Shown in pieces: positions 8,916 to 62,611 of a DNA stretch of 64,000 nucleotides. Position 1 is the stretch's first letter, and every line of letters starts with the position of its first letter. Made by a program: the position numbers and the translations under genes. Under the pieces are notes generated by a model that saw only the letters and a list, made by a program, of their open reading frames with translations, was not told the DNA's origin and made no database searches. The stretch spans positions 62,001 to 126,000 of the IMG/VR virus record IMGVR_UViG_3300020172_001601. One strand, 5' to 3'.

Positions 8916-9047
8916 GCTGGGGTAGTAGAATTGGAATGTATGACTAGGAAGCGACATGAGGTTGTAATGACCTTTAATTCGCCCCCATGACCATACAGAG
9001 AACGCTACAGTAATGTGGAAATGCAGGTTCGAGTCCTGCCCCCGGCA
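8916..9047 (+). ncRNA. tRNA-like RNA, GTAA tetraloop, D-loop insertion
   Basis: GCTGGGG/CCCCGGC; CTACA-GTAA-TGTGG; GCAGG-TTCGAGT-CCTGC. Confidence 0.75.
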
Positions 9048-12057: not shown

Positions 12058-12147
12058 TGTGAGATACGCTAGTTGGTAAGCGGCGAAGCTGTTAACTTCG
12101 TGCAATCCGTCTTGAACGGTACGCAGGTTCGACCCCTGCTCTCACAG
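12058..12147 (+). tRNA. tRNA-Asn(GTT) with long variable arm
   Basis: CGAAG-CTGTTAA-CTTCG; ~22-nt variable region. Confidence 0.75.
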
Positions 12148-12153
12148 CTTTCT

Positions 12154-13661: not shown

Positions 13662-13738
13662 GAGGTTGTGTTCGTCTAGTGGTCTAGGATGCCGTCGTTG
13701 AAGACGGCGACATGGGTTCAAATCCCATACACAATCTC
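13662..13738 (+). ncRNA. Glu-like tRNA body with 6-nt anticodon loop
   Basis: CCGTC-GTTGAA-GACGG; extended acceptor GAGGTTGTGT/ACACAATCTC. Confidence 0.65.
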
Positions 13739-13835: not shown

Positions 13836-13906
13836 GATTCGGGTTAGTGTAACGGTAGCACGGAGCCGTCAAAGGCTCCAGAGTGGTTCGACTCCACACC
13901 CTTATC
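13836..13906 (+). ncRNA. tRNA-like RNA, short anticodon loop (TAGTGTAACGGTAGCACG family)
   Basis: GGAGCC-GTCAAA-GGCTCC; T arm present. Confidence 0.6.
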
Positions 13907-13913
13907 ACAATAT

Positions 13914-39140: not shown

Positions 39141-39232
39141 GGGGGTGAACCCAAATGGTTGCGGGAACCGCCTTATAAGCGGCTTACAGTCAGATAAACT
39201 GAGTATACAAGGTTCGATTCCTTGCACCCCTA
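39141..39232 (+). tRNA. tRNA with TAT anticodon (Ile) and long variable arm
   Basis: CCGC-CTTATAA-GCGG; ~24-nt variable region. Confidence 0.75.
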
Positions 39233-39528
39233 CTCAAAGTTGCAATGGGCAAGAACAACAAATACCATAAATTCCCTCCCCGCAAGCAGGTTCCTGTCGG
39301 CGGGGTTTGTCTTTTGTGTCAATGCAATAGACAAGTGCGAATGGCAGCACGACCCTTCGTTAAGGGCAAGTCGATTTCTCATGCCCTTGGTTTTCCGGCT
39401 GCGATGCCTTTGCTTTCTCCCGGAATGATATTCAAAGGCGTCAATAACTTGACAGGTGAAGAAGAATCATTCAAAGTACAATGTGTATTGATTTTGAATC
39501 CAGAACGTAGTTCAGTAGAAAGAATAAA

Positions 39529-42034: not shown

Positions 42035-42370
42035 CATGCCAAGGGCGTCTTGGATTCATCGTGTTGATGCCCGCCGATTTCATTCGGCGGCAAGAATGAT
42101 GGAAGACGATTTGGAAGGTGCCTACTTGACCTGTAGGGAAAAGTACGGTGCAGAAGTGGCTGGAGTAGTGTTGGTCACAATACTCCGACAAAAATTGAAC
42201 AACAATCAAGACCAATGGCCTCCACCGGAAGACCTTATTCGCAAGGTGAACAACTTTCTCGTGGAACACGGCTTAATGATTGATTGAATTTGTTGACTGG
42301 ATGTGGGGTGCGAACCTCACCATGACATAGTGTGTCTGGTCAAATAACTCGAAAGGCAATGGTGATTACG

Positions 42371-44077
42371 ATGGCTAACAAGAATCTATTCAAGTCTGAG
42401 CGTGGCTCAATTGTTCCAGCAACGGACGTTCTCAACGAAGCTGGTGGTGTTGCATACAAGATGAGTGCAAAGCAGGCCCTTGCGCAGTACGTCTGCACTG
42501 GCTGCTTGAACGGCACCTACTACACGTCTGCCAAGACGCAACTGGACACTGTTCGTCAGTTGCTTACTGAAGTCGAGCCTGAGTTCCTTGGTCAGTTGGC
42601 TGTGTACTCGCACGAAAAGTCCTTCATGAAGGACTTGCCTGCTCTGTTGGTCGCATTCCTCGCATCCGACAAGGGTGCTGGTGGTGGTCCAACTACGGCT
42701 ACGCAGGAGCGAAAGCTGAAGACGCTCCGTAAGGTTTTCCATCGTGTCATCGACAGCGGCAACATGCTGCGCAACTTTGTGCAGATGATCCGTTCGGCAG
42801 CATTCGGTCGCAAGTCATTCGGTGAAGTGCCTCGCAAGCTGATTCGTGACTGGTTCGAGAATAAGTCTCCGGCTGGTATTTTCTTCCAGAGCATTGGCAA
42901 TAGCCCATCCCTGGCAGATATTATCAAGCTGACCAAGCCGAAGCCGAACACGCCTGAAAAGGCGGCTGTATTGGCGTATCTGCTTGGTGCAGAAACCGTT
43001 GACGGCGAAGATGGCAAGTTGCTTGTTCGCAAGTATCTTGACCGTGCCGACAAGCAGGTGAAGGTTGCGTACTCGCAGCCTTACGACAACCTGCCGGAAA
43101 TCATTCGTGAATACGAAGCGTGGAAGAAGGACAAGAGCCTCCCGGTTCCTGCCATCAACTTCCGCTTCCTGGACAACGAGAAGCTGTCAACTGCTCAGTG
43201 GGCAGATATTGCTTCCAAGGCAAACTGGCTTACGACCCTGAAGAACCTCAACGCATATGCCGACCACGGCGTATTCGGCGTTGAAGGCATGACTGACATG
43301 ATCGCCGCACGTCTCAGCAATGCTGATGAAGTGCGTAAGGTTCGGGTATTCCCATACCAGATCATGATGGCCTACCTCGCAACCGATACGGAAGCGAAAG
43401 TACCGCCCAAGGTCCGTAACGCCATTCAGGATGCTATGGAAGTGGCATGTGAAAACGTACCAGCGTTGGGAAAGGTTAAGTTCTTCCCGGACGTGTCTGG
43501 TTCGATGAGGAGCGCTGCTATTACGGGCGACCGTGGTTCGGCGACTTCTAAGGTTCGGTGTGTTGACGTGGCTGCTCTGTTCGCAGTGGCAATGCTTCGT
43601 CGCAACCCGGAAGCGGAAGTAATTCCGTTCGAGCAGACGGTTCGTGAACTTACACTGAACCCTCGTGACAGCATCATGACCAACGCTACTCGCCTCGCAG
43701 CGATTGGCGGTGGTGGAACCAACTGTTCGGCCCCACTTGCTTTGCTCAACGCAAAGAAGGATTGGTCGGCAGACGTGTTGGTGTATATTTCGGACTATGA
43801 GTCCTGGGTGGATAGCACTGGCTACCACGCTGGTAATGGCAACGGTACAGCACTGCTCAATGAGTGGGTGAAGTACAAGAGCCATAACAAGAATGCCAAG
43901 CTGATTTGCATCGACTTGACCCCTCGTGCAAACCATCAGGTCAAGGAACGTGATGATATTCTCCAGGTCGGTGGATTCTCGGACAACGTATTCAACGTGA
44001 TCGCAAGGTTCGTTGAAGGCGGCTGGTCGAAGGATTTTTGGGTCAAGGAGATTGAAAGCGTTCAACTGGATACTTAA
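42371..44077 (+). CDS. rsr: Ro60/TROVE domain RNA-binding protein with vWA domain
   Basis: NEAGGVAY, TGCLNGTYY, LKNL, VFPYQ, MIDAS DVSGSM, GGGTNCSAPL, ISDYESW. Confidence 0.9.
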   Translation: MANKNLFKSERGSIVPATDVLNEAGGVAYKMSAKQALAQYVCTGCLNGTYYTSAKTQLDTVRQLLTEVEPEFLGQLAVYSHEKSFMKDLPALLVAFLASDKGAGGGPTTATQERKLKTLRKVFHRVIDSGNMLRNFVQMIRSAAFGRKSFGEVPRKLIRDWFENKSPAGIFFQSIGNSPSLADIIKLTKPKPNTPEKAAVLAYLLGAETVDGEDGKLLVRKYLDRADKQVKVAYSQPYDNLPEIIREYEAWKKDKSLPVPAINFRFLDNEKLSTAQWADIASKANWLTTLKNLNAYADHGVFGVEGMTDMIAARLSNADEVRKVRVFPYQIMMAYLATDTEAKVPPKVRNAIQDAMEVACENVPALGKVKFFPDVSGSMRSAAITGDRGSATSKVRCVDVAALFAVAMLRRNPEAEVIPFEQTVRELTLNPRDSIMTNATRLAAIGGGGTNCSAPLALLNAKKDWSADVLVYISDYESWVDSTGYHAGNGNGTALLNEWVKYKSHNKNAKLICIDLTPRANHQVKERDDILQVGGFSDNVFNVIARFVEGGWSKDFWVKEIESVQLDT

Positions 44078-59146: not shown

Positions 59147-60796
59147 ATGAACGAATTCCATATTTCGGAAAAAGACAACAACACCACGTTCGTCACAACG
59201 GCGATTGATTATCCGAACGCTCTGCCACATATCGGCACAGCATTCGAGAAGATCGGCGCTGACGTATACGCCCGGTTCCGTCGTTTCCAGGGTCGTGATG
59301 TATATTTCACGATGGGCAACGACGAGAACACTGTGAAGGTTCTCAAAGCAGCAAAAGCCGTAGACAAGCATCCTCAGCCATATGTCGATGAAATGGCCGA
59401 TGCGTTTAAGGCTGTGTGGAAAGAACTCAACATTTCCTTTGACGACTTCATTCAGACCAGTGAAGATCGACACCTGTTGGGTGTTCAGAGATTCCTGCGT
59501 GCTGTGAATTCCGCTGGTTATATTGAGAAGCGACCATACAAGGCTTTGTATTGTGAGGGCTGTGAAGAGTTCAAGAGTCCAAATAGCTTGGACTATGCAA
59601 AGCGATGCCCGAACCATACTGGCACACCTTTGGTGGAACGGGAGGAAGAGAATTACTTCTTTCTTCTGTCTGCATTCAAGCAGCGTGTGGCTGATTTGAT
59701 TTATCCCACTCCATTCCTCACTGCCTTCCTGAGTATTGAGCCTGAGTCTCGCTACAACGAAGTCACTAAGTTCATCGACACGGAACTGACGGATATTTCC
59801 ATCAGTCGCCGTAATGAAGGCTGGGGCATTCCAATTCCGTGGGACGACACCCAAGCCACCTATGTCTGGTTCGACGCTTTGTTGAACTATTTGACTGTGA
59901 TTGGTTTTGGGAACGATTGGGAGAAATTCCAAAAGTATTGGCCTGCTGAAGTTCACTTCATTGGCAAGGACATTACTCGGTTCCACTGTGCATTGTTCCC
60001 GGCAATGTGCATGGCCTATAACGAAGGATGTGATAAGCTGGGTGAGCCTCAATACAAGTTGAAGGCTTTTCCTCAGCGTGTATTTGCACACGGCTTCGTC
60101 AATCAAAAGAAGGGAAGTCAGGTTGTCAAGATTTCCAAGAGCGGAGATTCAATCCGACCTGGAGAACTGATTGAGCAGTTCGGGTCGGATGCGTACAGAT
60201 ACTATTTCTTGTCGAAGTTCAACTACGATACGGACGGTGAATATAGCCTGGACCACTTTAGAGAAGTGTATAACGCCGACCTCGCCAACTCCTTGGGCAA
60301 CCTTGTGAGTCGCACCGTAGGAATGTCGTTGCAGTATTTCGACGGGAAGATTCCACCGATGGTCGCAGAAGGCCAGCCTTGGCTTGATGAGAAGACGGCG
60401 TTGGAATACGAGCAATTTATTGTTGATTGTTGTTCGTATCGGCACGCTATTGAATGGACGTGGAAGATCATCTTCAACGCCAACAAGTTGATCGAGAATT
60501 CAAAGCCGTGGGAATTGGTTAAGTTGCCCGGCAACACCTGTGGTCAGGTGTTGGGCCAACTTGTGGGCAGTCTGAGAATCATCAGTCTGTTGATCCGACC
60601 GTTCACGCCAGCGGTGGCCGAGAAGATTTACACGACGTTTCAGTGGGCTGAAGGATGGAATGAAGTTGATTGGGAGTTCGTTAAGAAGTTGGCGACGAAC
60701 AACTTCCTGGGACTCGAAAACGGTATTGCCATCAACAGGAATGTTTTAGATAATGCTGGAAAGTTTCCGGTGCTTTTTCCGAGAGTCAAATCATGA
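59147..60796 (+). CDS. metG: methionyl-tRNA synthetase
   Basis: TTAIDYPNALPHIG, ISISR..WGIP, YVWFDAL, IGKDI, KISKS, LANSLGNL. Confidence 0.96.
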   Translation: MNEFHISEKDNNTTFVTTAIDYPNALPHIGTAFEKIGADVYARFRRFQGRDVYFTMGNDENTVKVLKAAKAVDKHPQPYVDEMADAFKAVWKELNISFDDFIQTSEDRHLLGVQRFLRAVNSAGYIEKRPYKALYCEGCEEFKSPNSLDYAKRCPNHTGTPLVEREEENYFFLLSAFKQRVADLIYPTPFLTAFLSIEPESRYNEVTKFIDTELTDISISRRNEGWGIPIPWDDTQATYVWFDALLNYLTVIGFGNDWEKFQKYWPAEVHFIGKDITRFHCALFPAMCMAYNEGCDKLGEPQYKLKAFPQRVFAHGFVNQKKGSQVVKISKSGDSIRPGELIEQFGSDAYRYYFLSKFNYDTDGEYSLDHFREVYNADLANSLGNLVSRTVGMSLQYFDGKIPPMVAEGQPWLDEKTALEYEQFIVDCCSYRHAIEWTWKIIFNANKLIENSKPWELVKLPGNTCGQVLGQLVGSLRIISLLIRPFTPAVAEKIYTTFQWAEGWNEVDWEFVKKLATNNFLGLENGIAINRNVLDNAGKFPVLFPRVKS

Positions 60797-60995: not shown

Positions 60996-61760
60996 ATGAG
61001 AATCGCATCCGAATTCCACGACTACTACGATGTAGGCATGGCTGAGGGCCAGGATCAATCCTTGGTCTATCAGCGATACCCTATCGTAGAGGAACGGGAG
61101 CATTACCCGTTCGGTTCAATGTATTCAGGCTACAGCCTGAATGCTCGATCTCTTTACGTCCGCTCATATACCATTGGGTTCTGTGGCAAAATGTACAAGG
61201 TATTGGAACTCAATACCTTGGAGAACGGTTCACGCAACGACAAGGAAGGTCGATCTACTCGTAAGTGGGCATACAACCTGCGGGATGTTGACACTTACAT
61301 CCGTCACCATTATCCTAAGCAATACGCTGACTATTTAGAAAAGAATTGGCGGCGTGGCAATGGCTGGTCTGGCGAACAGCGTCAGCACGCCTTTGATTCA
61401 TTCTTCAATGGTCGTAATCAGTGGGATCGCAAGCCTACCGAAGAGGAATTGAACAAGAATGAAGAGTGGCGTCGAAGCTGGTTCGAGAAGCATCGCAGTC
61501 CTATATTCGTAGCTGAGTATTCTACTGTCGCCAACAAATACGGCGGTAGGATCACATATAACGCCCAACTGAAGCCATTTGAGTTTTATCGGGTGTTCGA
61601 TCCTTATCAGGCTTATCAGGAAGTCGCCATGTGGCTTTCTAATCAAGCTGTTCCGATCAAGCCGATTCCAGAGCTTGATGATGTGACAATGGCTGAGAGC
61701 AAAGGTTTCAATAAGTTTAGTTTTAGAAAAGACCCCAGCAGCAAAAAGCGAAAGCACTAG
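60996..61760 (+). CDS. phage hypothetical protein
   Basis: FHDYYD..IGFCGK..DPYQAYQEV. Confidence 0.65.
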   Translation: MRIASEFHDYYDVGMAEGQDQSLVYQRYPIVEEREHYPFGSMYSGYSLNARSLYVRSYTIGFCGKMYKVLELNTLENGSRNDKEGRSTRKWAYNLRDVDTYIRHHYPKQYADYLEKNWRRGNGWSGEQRQHAFDSFFNGRNQWDRKPTEEELNKNEEWRRSWFEKHRSPIFVAEYSTVANKYGGRITYNAQLKPFEFYRVFDPYQAYQEVAMWLSNQAVPIKPIPELDDVTMAESKGFNKFSFRKDPSSKKRKH

Positions 61761-61836
61761 GGGTTGAACGGTGAGTCCAATCGGTAAGGCGCAAGTCGCT
61801 CCGATGTAACTGAGGGTTCGATTCCCTCCAACTCCA
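61760..61836 (+). ncRNA. Ala-type tRNA-like domain without D stem or anticodon (mini tmRNA-like)
   Basis: GGGGTTG/CAACTCC-A (G3:U70), GAGGG-TTCGATT-CCCTC, ATCGG/CCGAT stem capped by GCAA hairpin. Confidence 0.65.
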
Positions 61837-62122
61837 CTATGAATGAAAAACCAGCAGATGGCGTCCGAGGCTTTTTTCTTTACAGTCCGTTTTCGCATCG
61901 GCACTTCTTCCGTGTTTACGGAGAAGTCGATCCGACGACGGGCCATAAGACGTTCACTGATTACAAGGTGTGCGCCGAAGATATAGAAGTCACTATTGAA
62001 GCAAATGGGTTGTCCCTGTATGAAGGGGATGAAGATAAAAACCGTCTCGATTGGTCCAGTCGTGTCTTAGGAAGAGATGGCAAAGACCACCTGGATGTGC
62101 GAACACCAAAAAAGGAACAGTA

Positions 62123-62611
62123 ATGGGACTTGCATTGCGTGTAGATGGAAATACTTATGCTGAGTGGGCATATTCTGGATATGGTCAATTCAGGAAGAAG
62201 ATTGCCGCTCAGGTCGGAATTGATCTCCATCAAATGGAAGGATTTCACAATGTTGATAAGTCAATATTGTCCATTCAGGGTTGGGAAGCCTACCGAGAAG
62301 CAATTGAAACCGATCTGTCCCAGGAGAAGATTAGCTGGGACACAGTGAATGATCCCATCAAGATTTTGCTGAATCATTCTGATTGTGAGGGAGAAATCCC
62401 GGCTGAGGATTGCAAAGTCTTGGCTGACCGGCTTGAGCAAATCATTAAGGAATGGCCTGAGCGGGTTAAATTGAAGACCGATCCTTTCTGGCAGGATCGA
62501 GGCTATCCAGCAGAATTAGACCTGGATGCTTACGACACAACACAGGCAAAGGGTCTTATTGCGGGTTTGCGAGAAGCTGCTAAAATTGGCAAGCCCGTAG
62601 AATTTTCCTGA
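62123..62611 (+). CDS. phage hypothetical protein
   Basis: WAYSGY..LLNHSDCEGEI. Confidence 0.65.
   Translation: MGLALRVDGNTYAEWAYSGYGQFRKKIAAQVGIDLHQMEGFHNVDKSILSIQGWEAYREAIETDLSQEKISWDTVNDPIKILLNHSDCEGEIPAEDCKVLADRLEQIIKEWPERVKLKTDPFWQDRGYPAELDLDAYDTTQAKGLIAGLREAAKIGKPVEFS

What the first reader, a model, noticed from the sequence alone, without database searches (positions are those of the whole stretch)
61760..61836. 77-nt mini-tmRNA-like RNA (Ala acceptor, no D stem, no anticodon, no tag ORF)
Seen: GGGGTTG/CAACTCCA with G3:U70 and A73, an unpaired ~13-nt D region, a canonical T arm and a short GCAA-capped stem. Known: this layout matches the tRNA-like domain of tmRNA bound by SmpB. Inference: it could release stalled ribosomes without degradation tagging, or sequester SmpB.
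Basis: partly seen in the sequence, partly recalled or inferred. Interest (0 to 1): 0.68.

Follow-up and report, generated by a model that had tools for sequence, protein, structure and literature searches.

The report
Phage tmRNA-like RNA without tag
A 77-base gene in a huge freshwater phage encodes a conserved alanine-type, tRNA-shaped RNA that resembles only the tRNA-like end of tmRNA; such "TLD-only" RNAs were first noted in mycobacteriophage DS6A, are common in phages, and probably interfere with or modify ribosome rescue.

Summary
Window 61760-61836 (+) has a 7-bp acceptor stem with G3:U70 and A73, a perfect T arm, no D stem, no anticodon arm and no tag ORF. It fills the gap between two ORFs exactly.

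It is not a decayed tRNA-Ala. It belongs to a family of 68-94-nt RNAs in phage contigs that includes the "TLD only" tmRNA of mycobacteriophage DS6A. Twenty-eight family members exceed Rfam's tmRNA threshold. The candidate does not (33.2 bits against 47). It sits in a divergent subfamily found in 133-340-kb phages, including 82 cultured Streptomyces phages where it is unannotated.

Two models built without the candidate score it 56.4 and 53.4 bits, against 33.5 and 29.0 for the best true tRNA in the window. Covariation supports every helix, while G3:U70 never varies.

This phage also encodes SmpB, which none of 54 other carrier records does. It has a CCA-adding-type enzyme gene but no full tmRNA in the 340 kb held (69% complete).

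Most likely the RNA is cut out, alanylated and bound by SmpB, and then competes with tmRNA or gives tag-free rescue. That function is inferred, not shown. It is a new variant of a known but little-studied kind.

The parts
61760..61836 (+). 77-nt TLD-only tmRNA-like RNA gene (whole element, G1 to discriminator A73)
   Evidence: Sequence. Family models score it 56.4 bits (R1) and 53.4 bits (R2). Rfam tmRNA gives 33.2 bits, matching both ends of the model. It is the only copy in the 340-kb record.
61760..61766 (+). Acceptor stem, 5' strand (GGGGUUG). It pairs with 61829-61835 (CAACUCC) and includes G3:U70.
   Evidence: In alignment A6, G1:C72, G2:C71 and G3:U70 are invariant, while pairs 4 and 5 covary.
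61767..61779 (+). D-loop-like region without a D stem (AACGGUGAGUCCA). It contains the GG typical of the tRNA/tmRNA elbow. Positions 15-17 (AGU) can pair with 50-52 (ACU, 61809-61811).
   Evidence: Relatives form a full helix here (columns 15-25 with 42-53). In the window, 3 of the 11 pairs are mismatched.
61780..61805 (+). Central hairpin in place of an anticodon arm. The stem is AUCGG/CCGAU and the apical module is UAAG-GCG-CAAGU-CGC-U.
   Evidence: The stem covaries with relatives (CAGG/CCUG, UGAG/CUCA, UAGG/CCUA, GUUACUG/CGGUAAC). The same module type is seen in DS6A (GAAAA-CCGCACGCGG).
61812..61828 (+). T arm (GAGGG-UUCGAUU-CCCUC)
61829..61836 (+). Acceptor stem, 3' strand, plus discriminator A73
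61837..61839 (+). 3' trailer CUA (CCA is not encoded). Its last base is the A of the next ORF's ATG.
   Evidence: In 57 distinct family members the trailer is CCA in 17, CAA in 13 and CTA in 8. A CCA-adding-type enzyme gene lies elsewhere in the genome.
60996..61760 (+). Upstream ORF P0001 (254 aa, unknown function, weak match to phrog_4243). Its stop codon TAG shares its G with G1 of the RNA.
   Evidence: The gene is absent from the close relative G001, where a 62-aa ORF ends with the same TAG|GGG overlap.
61839..62123 (+). Downstream ORF P0002 (94 aa, unknown function), with no spacer and no obvious ribosome-binding site
   Evidence: The protein is identical in G001 despite about 4% nucleotide differences, so it is a real gene that travels with the RNA.
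59147..60796 (+). Methionyl-tRNA synthetase-like gene, showing a translation-related neighbourhood
   Evidence: Pfam tRNA-synt_1g, 280.7 bits.

Best explanation
Window 61760-61836 is a gene for a small, stable, tRNA-shaped RNA. It is homologous to the tRNA-like domain (TLD) of tmRNA and belongs to the phage "TLD-only tmRNA" family whose first described member is in mycobacteriophage DS6A.

**Shown here**
- Anatomy: an Ala-type acceptor stem with G3:U70 and A73, a T arm, a D loop without a stem, and a hairpin with a conserved apical module instead of an anticodon arm or mRNA-like domain.
- Conservation and covariation in unrelated phages.
- Family membership.
- An smpB gene and a CCA-adding-type enzyme gene in the same genome.

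**Inferred mechanism**
1. The RNA is transcribed with its flanking ORFs. RNase P cuts at G1, and the 3' end is trimmed after A73 and given CCA.
2. Host AlaRS charges it with alanine through G3:U70 and A73.
3. SmpB (the phage's own, the host's, or both) binds its elbow and D-loop side.
4. The complex then either competes with full-length tmRNA for SmpB, EF-Tu and the empty A site of stalled ribosomes, which damps ssrA tagging, or it accepts the nascent chain without adding a degradation tag.

Of the two outcomes I consider competition or inhibition somewhat more likely. That is the only effect reported for a similar molecule.
For: **Anatomy**
-.

**Not a tRNA**
- ARAGORN makes no call.
- Rfam tRNA is below its 29-bit threshold, while 44 other tRNA matches in the window pass.
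- The tmRNA model is the best of the tRNA clan here, matching both ends of the model (33.2 bits).

**Family**
- A pattern scan of viral contigs gave 57 distinct non-tRNA sequences of 68-94 nt.
- 28 of the roughly 80-nt members exceed the tmRNA gathering score, up to 79.5 bits.
- The DS6A element at JN698994:28478-28557 scores 54.1 bits on the family model and has the same architecture.
- The candidate scores 56.4 and 53.4 bits on models built without it, against 33.5 and 29.0 for the best true tRNA in the window.

**Selection**
- 93% of cells are paired, and 12 of 23 pairs have changes on both sides. No shuffle of 500 reached this, and slid controls gave 34-56% paired.
- The wider family gives 95.5% paired.
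- G1:C72, G2:C71, G3:U70 and A73 are invariant even in members found through an internal motif that did not constrain the acceptor stem.
- Trailers are CCA-like in 38 of 57 members.

**Partners encoded by the phage**
- SmpB: 191.7 bits, 146 aa including a C-terminal tail.
- A CCA-adding-type enzyme gene.
- A neighbouring MetRS gene.

**Literature**
[quoted passage not shown] 2009; also PMC11915505).
Against: - This copy is below Rfam's tmRNA threshold. A true tRNA-Ala in the same genome scores higher on that model (39 bits).
- Its D loop reads GGUGAGUCCA instead of GG-UUCGAC, and the junction before the T stem is AACU instead of GGAC. Known SmpB-contact motifs (from my own knowledge of tmRNA) are therefore degraded.
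- 3 of the 11 pairs of the subfamily helix are mismatched.
- SmpB is absent from all 54 other carrier records tested, including at least 12 that are 90% complete or more. Co-encoding is not a family trait.
- Three complete genomes of the same subfamily also carry a normal tmRNA with a tag ORF. That is odd for a pure tmRNA inhibitor.
- No RNA data exist for this phage. Expression, ends, charging and SmpB binding are all untested.
- Model R1's seed contained two subfamily members, and the collecting pattern was derived from the candidate's own T arm and acceptor. Part of the R1 score is therefore circular. R2 and the motif-based scan avoid the pattern's constraint but use few sequences.
Confidence: 0.6

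Rival explanations
1. It is a decayed tRNA-Ala pseudogene that kept its acceptor stem and T arm by chance.
For: - Real tRNA-Ala genes share the acceptor and T-arm features and score similarly on the tmRNA model.
- The window holds 49 tRNA genes, so pseudogenes are plausible.
- This copy has mismatches in the subfamily helix.
Against: - Homologs in unrelated phages keep the same non-tRNA architecture, with compensatory changes.
- The two known alleles differ only at unpaired positions.
- The element is at least as conserved as its flanks between close relatives.
- No trace of a D stem or an anticodon loop remains.
Confidence: 0.04
2. Its main role is as a tRNA-like processing signal. RNase P and 3' processing would cut the polycistronic mRNA here. 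That would clip the upstream stop codon and release a nearly leaderless mRNA for the downstream ORF. The RNA itself would be a by-product.
For: - The element exactly fills the gap between the stop codon and the next ATG. TAG shares its G with G1, and the trailer's A is the A of ATG.
- The same overlap occurs with a different upstream ORF in G001 and L270.
- No ribosome-binding site is visible before P0002, and no promoter or terminator above chance lies nearby.
Against: - Processing needs only an acceptor and T-arm shape. It does not explain invariant G3:U70 and A73, the CCA-like trailers, or the conserved apical module.
- In DS6A and Jay2Jay the element is not wedged between ORFs.
- This role may well coexist with the main explanation.
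Confidence: 0.12
3. It is an alanine-accepting RNA used outside trans-translation. It might donate alanine to a non-ribosomal aminoacyl-transferase, or act as a decoy that soaks up AlaRS, EF-Tu, or a host nuclease that attacks tRNA.
For: - The AlaRS identity set is strictly kept while the tmRNA-typical D-loop and GAC motifs are weak in this subfamily.
- Subfamily members sit inside tRNA arrays and coexist with a normal tmRNA.
Against: - No candidate transferase was looked for or seen next to it.
- The family grades without a break into members that pass the curated tmRNA model.
- The apical module is shared with those members.
- This phage encodes SmpB.
Confidence: 0.12
4. It is a Y-RNA-like partner of the phage's Ro60-type protein.
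For: - A Ro60-like ORF lies in the window at 42332-44077 (vWA_Ro60, 59 bits).
- Streptomyces phage Jay2Jay has a Ro gene 2.8 kb upstream of its copy.
- Bacterial Y RNAs are known to mimic tRNA (own knowledge).
Against: - Ro60 is present in only 2 of 50 other carrier records, and absent from 10 of 12 that are 90% complete or more.
- In bacterial YrlA the RNA ends form the Ro-binding stem and the acceptor-like stem is closed (own knowledge). Here the ends form a free, Ala-type acceptor stem, which is the opposite topology.
- No Rfam Y-RNA match was found.
Confidence: 0.04

Closest known systems
"TLD only" tmRNA of mycobacteriophage DS6A (tmRNA Website ID 11587; Mao et al. 2009 as cited in PMC4131195 and PMC11915505)
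   Same: - About 80 nt, with an Ala-type acceptor stem (G3:U70, A73), a T arm and a D loop without a stem.
- A single hairpin with an A-rich internal loop and a short GC-rich tip.
- No tag ORF, and phage-encoded.
- It scores 54.1 bits on the same family model that gives the candidate 56.4.
   Different: - DS6A keeps the tmRNA-typical GGUGGUCGAC D loop and a CACG junction. The candidate has GGUGAGUCCA and AACU, plus an extra, partly mismatched helix that reaches the T stem.
- DS6A is a 60-kb temperate phage with no annotated smpB (not searched with the SmpB profile). The candidate sits in a genome of more than 340 kb that has smpB, 52 tRNA genes and aminoacyl-tRNA synthetase genes.
Full-length tmRNA (Rfam RF00023) with SmpB
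   Same: - The tRNA-like domain layout and the alanine identity elements.
- The Rfam tmRNA model aligns both of its ends to the element.
- SmpB is encoded by the same phage.
   Different: - No mRNA-like domain, resume codon, tag ORF or pseudoknots.
- 33.2 bits, below the 47-bit threshold.
- 77 nt instead of about 280-400.
Unannotated subfamily copies in cluster BE Streptomyces phages (such as Jay2Jay NC_029098:87505-87584) and in the uncultured 340-kb, 145-kb and 114-kb phage records G014, G051 and G046
   Same: - Closest relatives by structure: the same D-loop start (GAAAGG/GAACGG), the same helix registers, the same type of apical module, and 77-78 nt in length.
- A model built from five of them scores the candidate at 53.4 bits.
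- They occur in large phages with tRNA arrays.
   Different: - Their apical motif is AAAGCCGACAAUGGA. The candidate has UAAGGCGCAAGUCGCU.
- Their long helix is almost fully paired.
- Jay2Jay, G054 and G014 also have a full tmRNA and no smpB. This phage has smpB and no tmRNA in the part held.
CDS-less organellar tmRNAs (jakobid mitochondria, Rfam RF02544; about 65-nt plastid forms, PMC11915505)
   Same: Reduced tmRNAs that keep only the tRNA-like part and are thought to work with SmpB.
   Different: The RF02544 model finds nothing in this genome. They are organellar, with a different sequence and a separate origin.
tRNA-Ala
   Same: Acceptor stem with G3:U70 and A73, a T arm, and GG in the D region.
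   Different: No D stem, no anticodon stem-loop and no Ala anticodon. Rfam tRNA is below threshold and ARAGORN is negative.

Membership tests
Phage TLD-only tmRNA (DS6A type) | A contiguous RNA of about 70-90 nt whose 5' and 3' ends form a 7-bp acceptor stem with G3:U70 and discriminator A73, followed by a canonical T arm | tested here: met
Phage TLD-only tmRNA (DS6A type) | No D stem, no anticodon arm, and no mRNA-like domain or tag ORF. A single hairpin with an A-rich internal loop and a short GC tip lies between the D loop and the T arm. | tested here: met
   The module reads UAAG-GCG-CAAGU-CGC-U.
Phage TLD-only tmRNA (DS6A type) | A significant score on a covariance model built from other members without the candidate, clearly above true tRNA-Ala | tested here: met
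   R1 gives 56.4 bits against 33.5 for the best window tRNA, and against a median near 41 for pattern-matched tRNA-Ala. R2 gives 53.4 against 29.0. Caveat: the R1 seed included two subfamily relatives.
Phage TLD-only tmRNA (DS6A type) | tmRNA-type D loop (GG..UUCGAC) and a GAC junction before the T stem | tested here: inconclusive
   The GG is present, but the candidate has UCCA instead of UCGA and AACU instead of GGAC. Among 41 family members of 74-82 nt, only 13 have UCGAC or UCGAU and 16 have GAC.
Phage TLD-only tmRNA (DS6A type) | Binds SmpB and/or inhibits tmRNA function | not testable with these tools
   Reported for a similar molecule (PMC4131195, PMC11915505). The only evidence here is co-encoded smpB.
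tmRNA (Rfam RF00023) | Score at or above the curated gathering score of 47 bits | tested here: not met
   33.2 bits. By contrast, 28 other family members of about 80 nt pass.
tmRNA (Rfam RF00023) | An mRNA-like domain with a resume codon and a tag reading frame, plus pseudoknots | tested here: not met
   Only 41 nt lie between the two TLD halves. ARAGORN finds no tmRNA.
Two-piece (permuted) tmRNA (RF04321) | Permuted gene order, with the acceptor piece before the coding piece | tested here: not met
   Best match is 22.9 bits against a threshold of 47, with a mismatched pairing partner inside the downstream ORF.
Mitochondrial CDS-less tmRNA (RF02544) | A match to the curated model | tested here: not met
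   No match at E <= 1 in the whole record.
tRNA-Ala | A cloverleaf with a D stem and an anticodon stem-loop carrying an Ala anticodon, and an Rfam tRNA score of at least 29 bits | tested here: not met
   ARAGORN makes a call only at a 50% threshold, and then with a nonsensical 4-nt anticodon.
Bacterial Y RNA (YrlA-type tRNA mimic) with Ro60 | The RNA termini form the Ro60-binding stem, and a Ro60 gene co-occurs | tested here: not met
   Here the termini form a free acceptor stem. Ro60 is present in only 2 of 50 other carrier records, although a Ro60-like ORF does exist in this window.

The most novel reading that the evidence does not exclude
The phage's own SmpB and this tag-less, alanine-charged mini-TLD might form a minimal, phage-run ribosome-rescue device.

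- It would enter stalled ribosomes and add untemplated alanine. With no resume codon, this could possibly happen repeatedly, giving a short Ala tail.
- Alternatively, it would free ribosomes without marking phage proteins for host proteolysis.
- It might be self-coupled. Cutting the RNA out at G1 removes the last base of the upstream stop codon, so maturation itself would create a non-stop mRNA.
- The conserved apical module (A-rich loop plus GC tip) would then be a docking site for a still unknown partner.
Probability: 0.12. Interest if true: 0.8.

Novelty: new variant of a known kind. Interest (0 to 1): 0.6.

Why it matters
**Current state of knowledge**
- In what I could search and read, TLD-only tmRNAs appear as a single phage example (DS6A) plus a few organellar forms.
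- Standard annotation misses them. ARAGORN and the Rfam thresholds fail on this copy.
- GenBank records of 82 cultured Streptomyces phages carry the subfamily with no feature annotated.

**What this analysis adds**
- The kind is widespread.
- It is structurally constrained and keeps the alanine identity set.
- It splits into two forms. Small phages carry a canonical form with no tmRNA or SmpB of their own. Large tRNA-rich phages carry a divergent form, sometimes beside a full tmRNA and, in this phage, beside smpB.

**Why that is useful**
- How phages manipulate ribosome rescue becomes directly testable in culturable systems, namely Streptomyces BE-cluster phages and DS6A.
- Surveys of "translation genes in huge phages" that rely on ARAGORN probably under-count tmRNA-related RNAs.

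Tried and rejected
**Comparisons that turned out not to discriminate, or gave nothing**
- Rfam tmRNA score as proof: rejected, because a true tRNA-Ala in the same genome scores higher.
- Full, permuted and mitochondrial tmRNA models on the whole 340-kb record: nothing above threshold.
- AlaRS gene in the genome: none.
- blastn of the locus and of short RNAs against cultured phages: insensitive. It did find the Streptomyces subfamily copies.

**Relatives and variation**
- Protein-based search for syntenic relatives through P0001 gave one distant locus, where a tRNA-Met follows the homolog. P0001 proved to be an indel, absent from the nearest relative.
- A metagenome scan for candidate-type variants with free stems found only the two known alleles. 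This allele therefore has no covariation data of its own.

**Expression and signals**
- Sequencing runs: no RNA run holds the phage.
- Laying contigs of four DNA runs did not list differences inside the element, because the output was truncated.
- Promoter and terminator scan: nothing above chance.

**Hypotheses set aside**
- Co-occurrence with SmpB across the family: 0 of 54 other records. "Always paired with phage SmpB" is rejected.
- Ro60 / Y-RNA link: rejected as a general rule.
- TAG recoding, suggested by two tRNA(CUA) genes: no sign of it, since code 11 already gives 87.6% ORF coverage.

**Limits of the methods used**
- The MAFFT alignment of the whole family was poor in the hairpin.
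- Per-sequence folding z-scores were modest (mean -1.09).
- Mao et al. 2009 could not be read. Its result is cited second-hand.

Full report
**Source**

The window is bases 62001-126000 of a 340,341-bp IMG/VR virus record that CheckV rates as 69% complete. It is a huge phage seen in freshwater metagenomes from at least nine studies. The genome carries 52 tRNA genes, 49 of them in the window, and a MetRS-like gene just upstream of the finding.

**Observation**

- GGGGUUG pairs with CAACUCC, giving G3:U70, and is followed by A73.
- The T arm is GAGGG-UUCGAUU-CCCUC.
- A hairpin AUCGG/CCGAU carries a small GC-rich tip.
- Positions 8-20 have no D stem.

RNAfold returns this layout at -28.3 kcal/mol, but the z-score is only -2.25. 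ARAGORN calls nothing here even at relaxed settings. Rfam's tRNA model stays below its 29-bit threshold, while 44 tRNA matches in the window pass.

The element fills the intergenic gap exactly. The G of the upstream stop codon TAG is G1. The trailer after A73 is CUA, and its A begins the ATG of the next ORF.

**Why the tmRNA-model hit alone proves little**

Rfam's tmRNA model aligns its two ends to the element at 33.2 bits, against a threshold of 47. The same model gives 39 bits to the ordinary tRNA-Ala(GGC) of this genome. What does discriminate is the contrast between models. True tRNA-Ala genes score about 65 bits on the tRNA model, and the element scores less than 29.

**A family, not a wreck**

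I scanned viral contigs with a pattern that kept only the acceptor and T-arm letters and left 38-68 free bases between them.
- 74 of 120 matches, or 57 distinct sequences of 68-94 nt, are not tRNAs by ARAGORN.
- Most share one design: acceptor stem, an unpaired stretch with GG (often UGGU-UCGAC), one hairpin of 5-9 bp with an A-rich internal loop and a 3-4-bp GC tip, a short linker (often GGAC), then the T arm.
- 28 of these roughly 80-nt RNAs exceed the curated tmRNA threshold, up to 79.5 bits.

The literature already knows one such molecule. [quoted passage not shown] 2009; repeated in PMC11915505, which adds CDS-less plastid forms). I located the DS6A element at JN698994:28478-28557, where it is unannotated. 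It has the same architecture and scores 54.1 bits on the family model.

**Membership of the candidate**

- Model R1 was built from 38 family members without the candidate or its near-identical relative. It scores the candidate at 56.4 bits (E 7e-11) and the window's tRNA-Ala genes at 33.5 and 28.1.
- True tRNA-Ala genes that satisfy the same search pattern mostly score 32-47 bits. Roughly 15 bits of the candidate's score therefore come from parts the pattern did not fix.
- The candidate is nonetheless a divergent member. Its closest structural relatives share an internal motif, AAAGCCGACAAUGGA. They come from large phages: a 340-kb and 99% complete record (G014), a 114-kb and a 145-kb record, and two complete 133-kb genomes. 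One of the 133-kb genomes matches Streptomyces phage Jay2Jay in length (133,531 bp) and in the position of the element.
- blastn finds this subfamily in 82 cultured Streptomyces phages, always with no feature annotated. In Jay2Jay it lies inside the tRNA array, 3 nt upstream of a tRNA-Leu.
- Model R2, built from five of these sequences only, scores the candidate at 53.4 bits (E 4.5e-11). The best true tRNA in the window scores 29.0.

**Covariation**

The subfamily alignment has seven sequences, including the two window-type alleles.
- 93% of cells form standard pairs.
- 12 of 23 pairs show changes on both sides.
- No shuffle of 500 reaches the observed values.
- Sliding the partners by 1-3 columns drops pairing to 34-56%.
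- G1:C72, G2:C71 and G3:U70 never vary, while pairs 4 and 5 switch among GC, CG and UA.

These members were found through the internal motif, so their acceptor stems were not constrained by the search. The wider family gives the same picture: 95.5% of cells paired, against 49-61% for the slid controls. Trailers after A73 are CCA in 17, CAA in 13 and CTA in 8 of 57 sequences. Together these features point to selection for a chargeable, alanine-specific 3' end, not only for a processing shape.

In the candidate itself, 3 of the 11 pairs of the long subfamily helix are mismatched, and the UCGAC and GAC motifs are absent.

**Close relatives**

Two metagenome contigs carry a second allele with two differences, A8C and loss of G47. 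Both changes are at unpaired positions. Their flanks are 88-96% identical to the window.
- The 254-aa upstream ORF of the window is missing from them.
- A 62-aa ORF ends there with the same TAG|GGG overlap.
- The downstream 94-aa ORF encodes an identical protein despite about 4% nucleotide change.

The RNA and the downstream gene therefore stay together while the upstream gene comes and goes.

**Partners**

- The phage encodes a complete SmpB of 146 aa (PF01668, 191.7 bits). Its best solved relative is 5zey, and it has a C-terminal tail.
- It encodes a CCA-adding-type nucleotidyltransferase.
- It has no AlaRS.
- It has no full, permuted or mitochondrial-type tmRNA in the 340 kb held.
- None of 54 other carrier records has SmpB, including at least 12 that are 90% complete or more.
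- G014, Jay2Jay and its sister genome each carry a normal tmRNA with a tag ORF in addition to the mini RNA. The TLD sequence of that tmRNA differs from the mini RNA.
- The canonical minis occur in complete 33-70-kb genomes that have no tmRNA or SmpB of their own.

**Mechanism**

- Shown: anatomy, conservation, family membership and co-encoded partners.
- Inferred: excision by RNase P and 3' trimming, CCA addition, alanylation by host AlaRS, binding by SmpB, and competition with tmRNA or tag-free rescue at stalled ribosomes.
- Inhibition is the only effect reported for a similar molecule. However, coexistence with full phage tmRNAs, and with smpB here, leaves room for a cooperative role.
- Because RNase P would cut between the A and the G of the upstream TAG, maturation should leave the upstream message without a stop codon. 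A comparable overlap of smpB and ssrA was noted in Carsonella (PMC4131195).

**Rivals**

- A decayed tRNA is excluded by the conservation data.
- A pure processing signal fits the tight packing but not the identity elements.
- A non-ribosomal alanine donor or a decoy cannot be excluded.
- A Ro60-linked Y-like RNA is unlikely. Ro60 genes occur only in this phage and the Streptomyces BE-type genomes among the carriers, and the topology is the opposite of known bacterial Y RNAs.

**Verdict**

This is a real, selected small-RNA gene. It is a divergent member of the phage TLD-only tmRNA family, that is, a new variant of a known but barely studied kind. It has an unusual genomic partner (phage smpB), and culturable relatives are available in which the function can be tested.

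Noticed in passing
window 42332-44077 (+): A 581-aa ORF with a Ro60 vWA domain (59 bits) and a weak TROVE match. This is a phage Ro60-like RNA-binding protein. No Y-RNA family was found in the 700 bases downstream.
   Followed up: partly
outside the window: G000:C1:245484-245924 (locus L014:1483-1923): A phage-encoded SmpB of 146 aa with a C-terminal tail. No tmRNA-like RNA lies within 1.5 kb of it.
   Followed up: yes
outside the window: G000:C1:182011-182084 and 182708-182778: Two tRNA genes with anticodon CUA (amber suppressors, labelled Pyl by ARAGORN). ORF coverage under the standard code is already 87.6%, so nothing shows TAG recoding. One 20-kb bin (280-300 kb) rises from 0.65 to 0.92 if TAG is read through.
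   Followed up: partly
window 60996-61757 versus L140: The 254-aa ORF P0001 (weak match to phrog_4243) is present in the window but precisely absent from a 93-96% identical relative. A 29%-identical homolog in another phage (L009) also sits inside a tRNA array, directly before a tRNA-Met. It may be a mobile gene that targets tRNA regions. A second ORF, around 62130-62592, is likewise absent from the relative.
   Followed up: partly
window 61758-61760 and 61837-61841: The upstream stop codon shares its last base with G1 of the RNA, and the RNA's trailer overlaps the downstream start codon. Processing should therefore create a non-stop upstream mRNA and a nearly leaderless downstream mRNA.
   Followed up: partly
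window 13664-13738, 13836-13908, 8916-9047, 12058-12148, 39141-39233: Odd tRNA genes. Two have a 2-nt "anticodon" by ARAGORN, and several are unusually long (91-132 nt), including tRNA-Asn and tRNA-Ile(UAU). These may contain introns or long insertions.
   Followed up: no
NC_029098 (Streptomyces phage Jay2Jay) 87505-87584, and 81 other Streptomyces phage records: The mini-TLD subfamily is present but unannotated in cultured cluster-BE-type phages. These phages also have an annotated tmRNA, a Ro protein and 40 or more tRNAs.
   Followed up: partly
outside the window: G000:C1:307105-307590 (-): An ORF of up to 549 aa with a PolyA_pol head domain. This is a likely CCA-adding enzyme, which fits the many tRNA genes that lack an encoded CCA.
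   Followed up: no
window 59880-59952 (inside the MetRS gene): Contigs from three other freshwater runs skip 71 bases here (GT..AG ends). This appeared only at 80% likeness and with short flanks, so it is probably cross-mapping of other organisms' MetRS genes rather than an intron.
   Followed up: no
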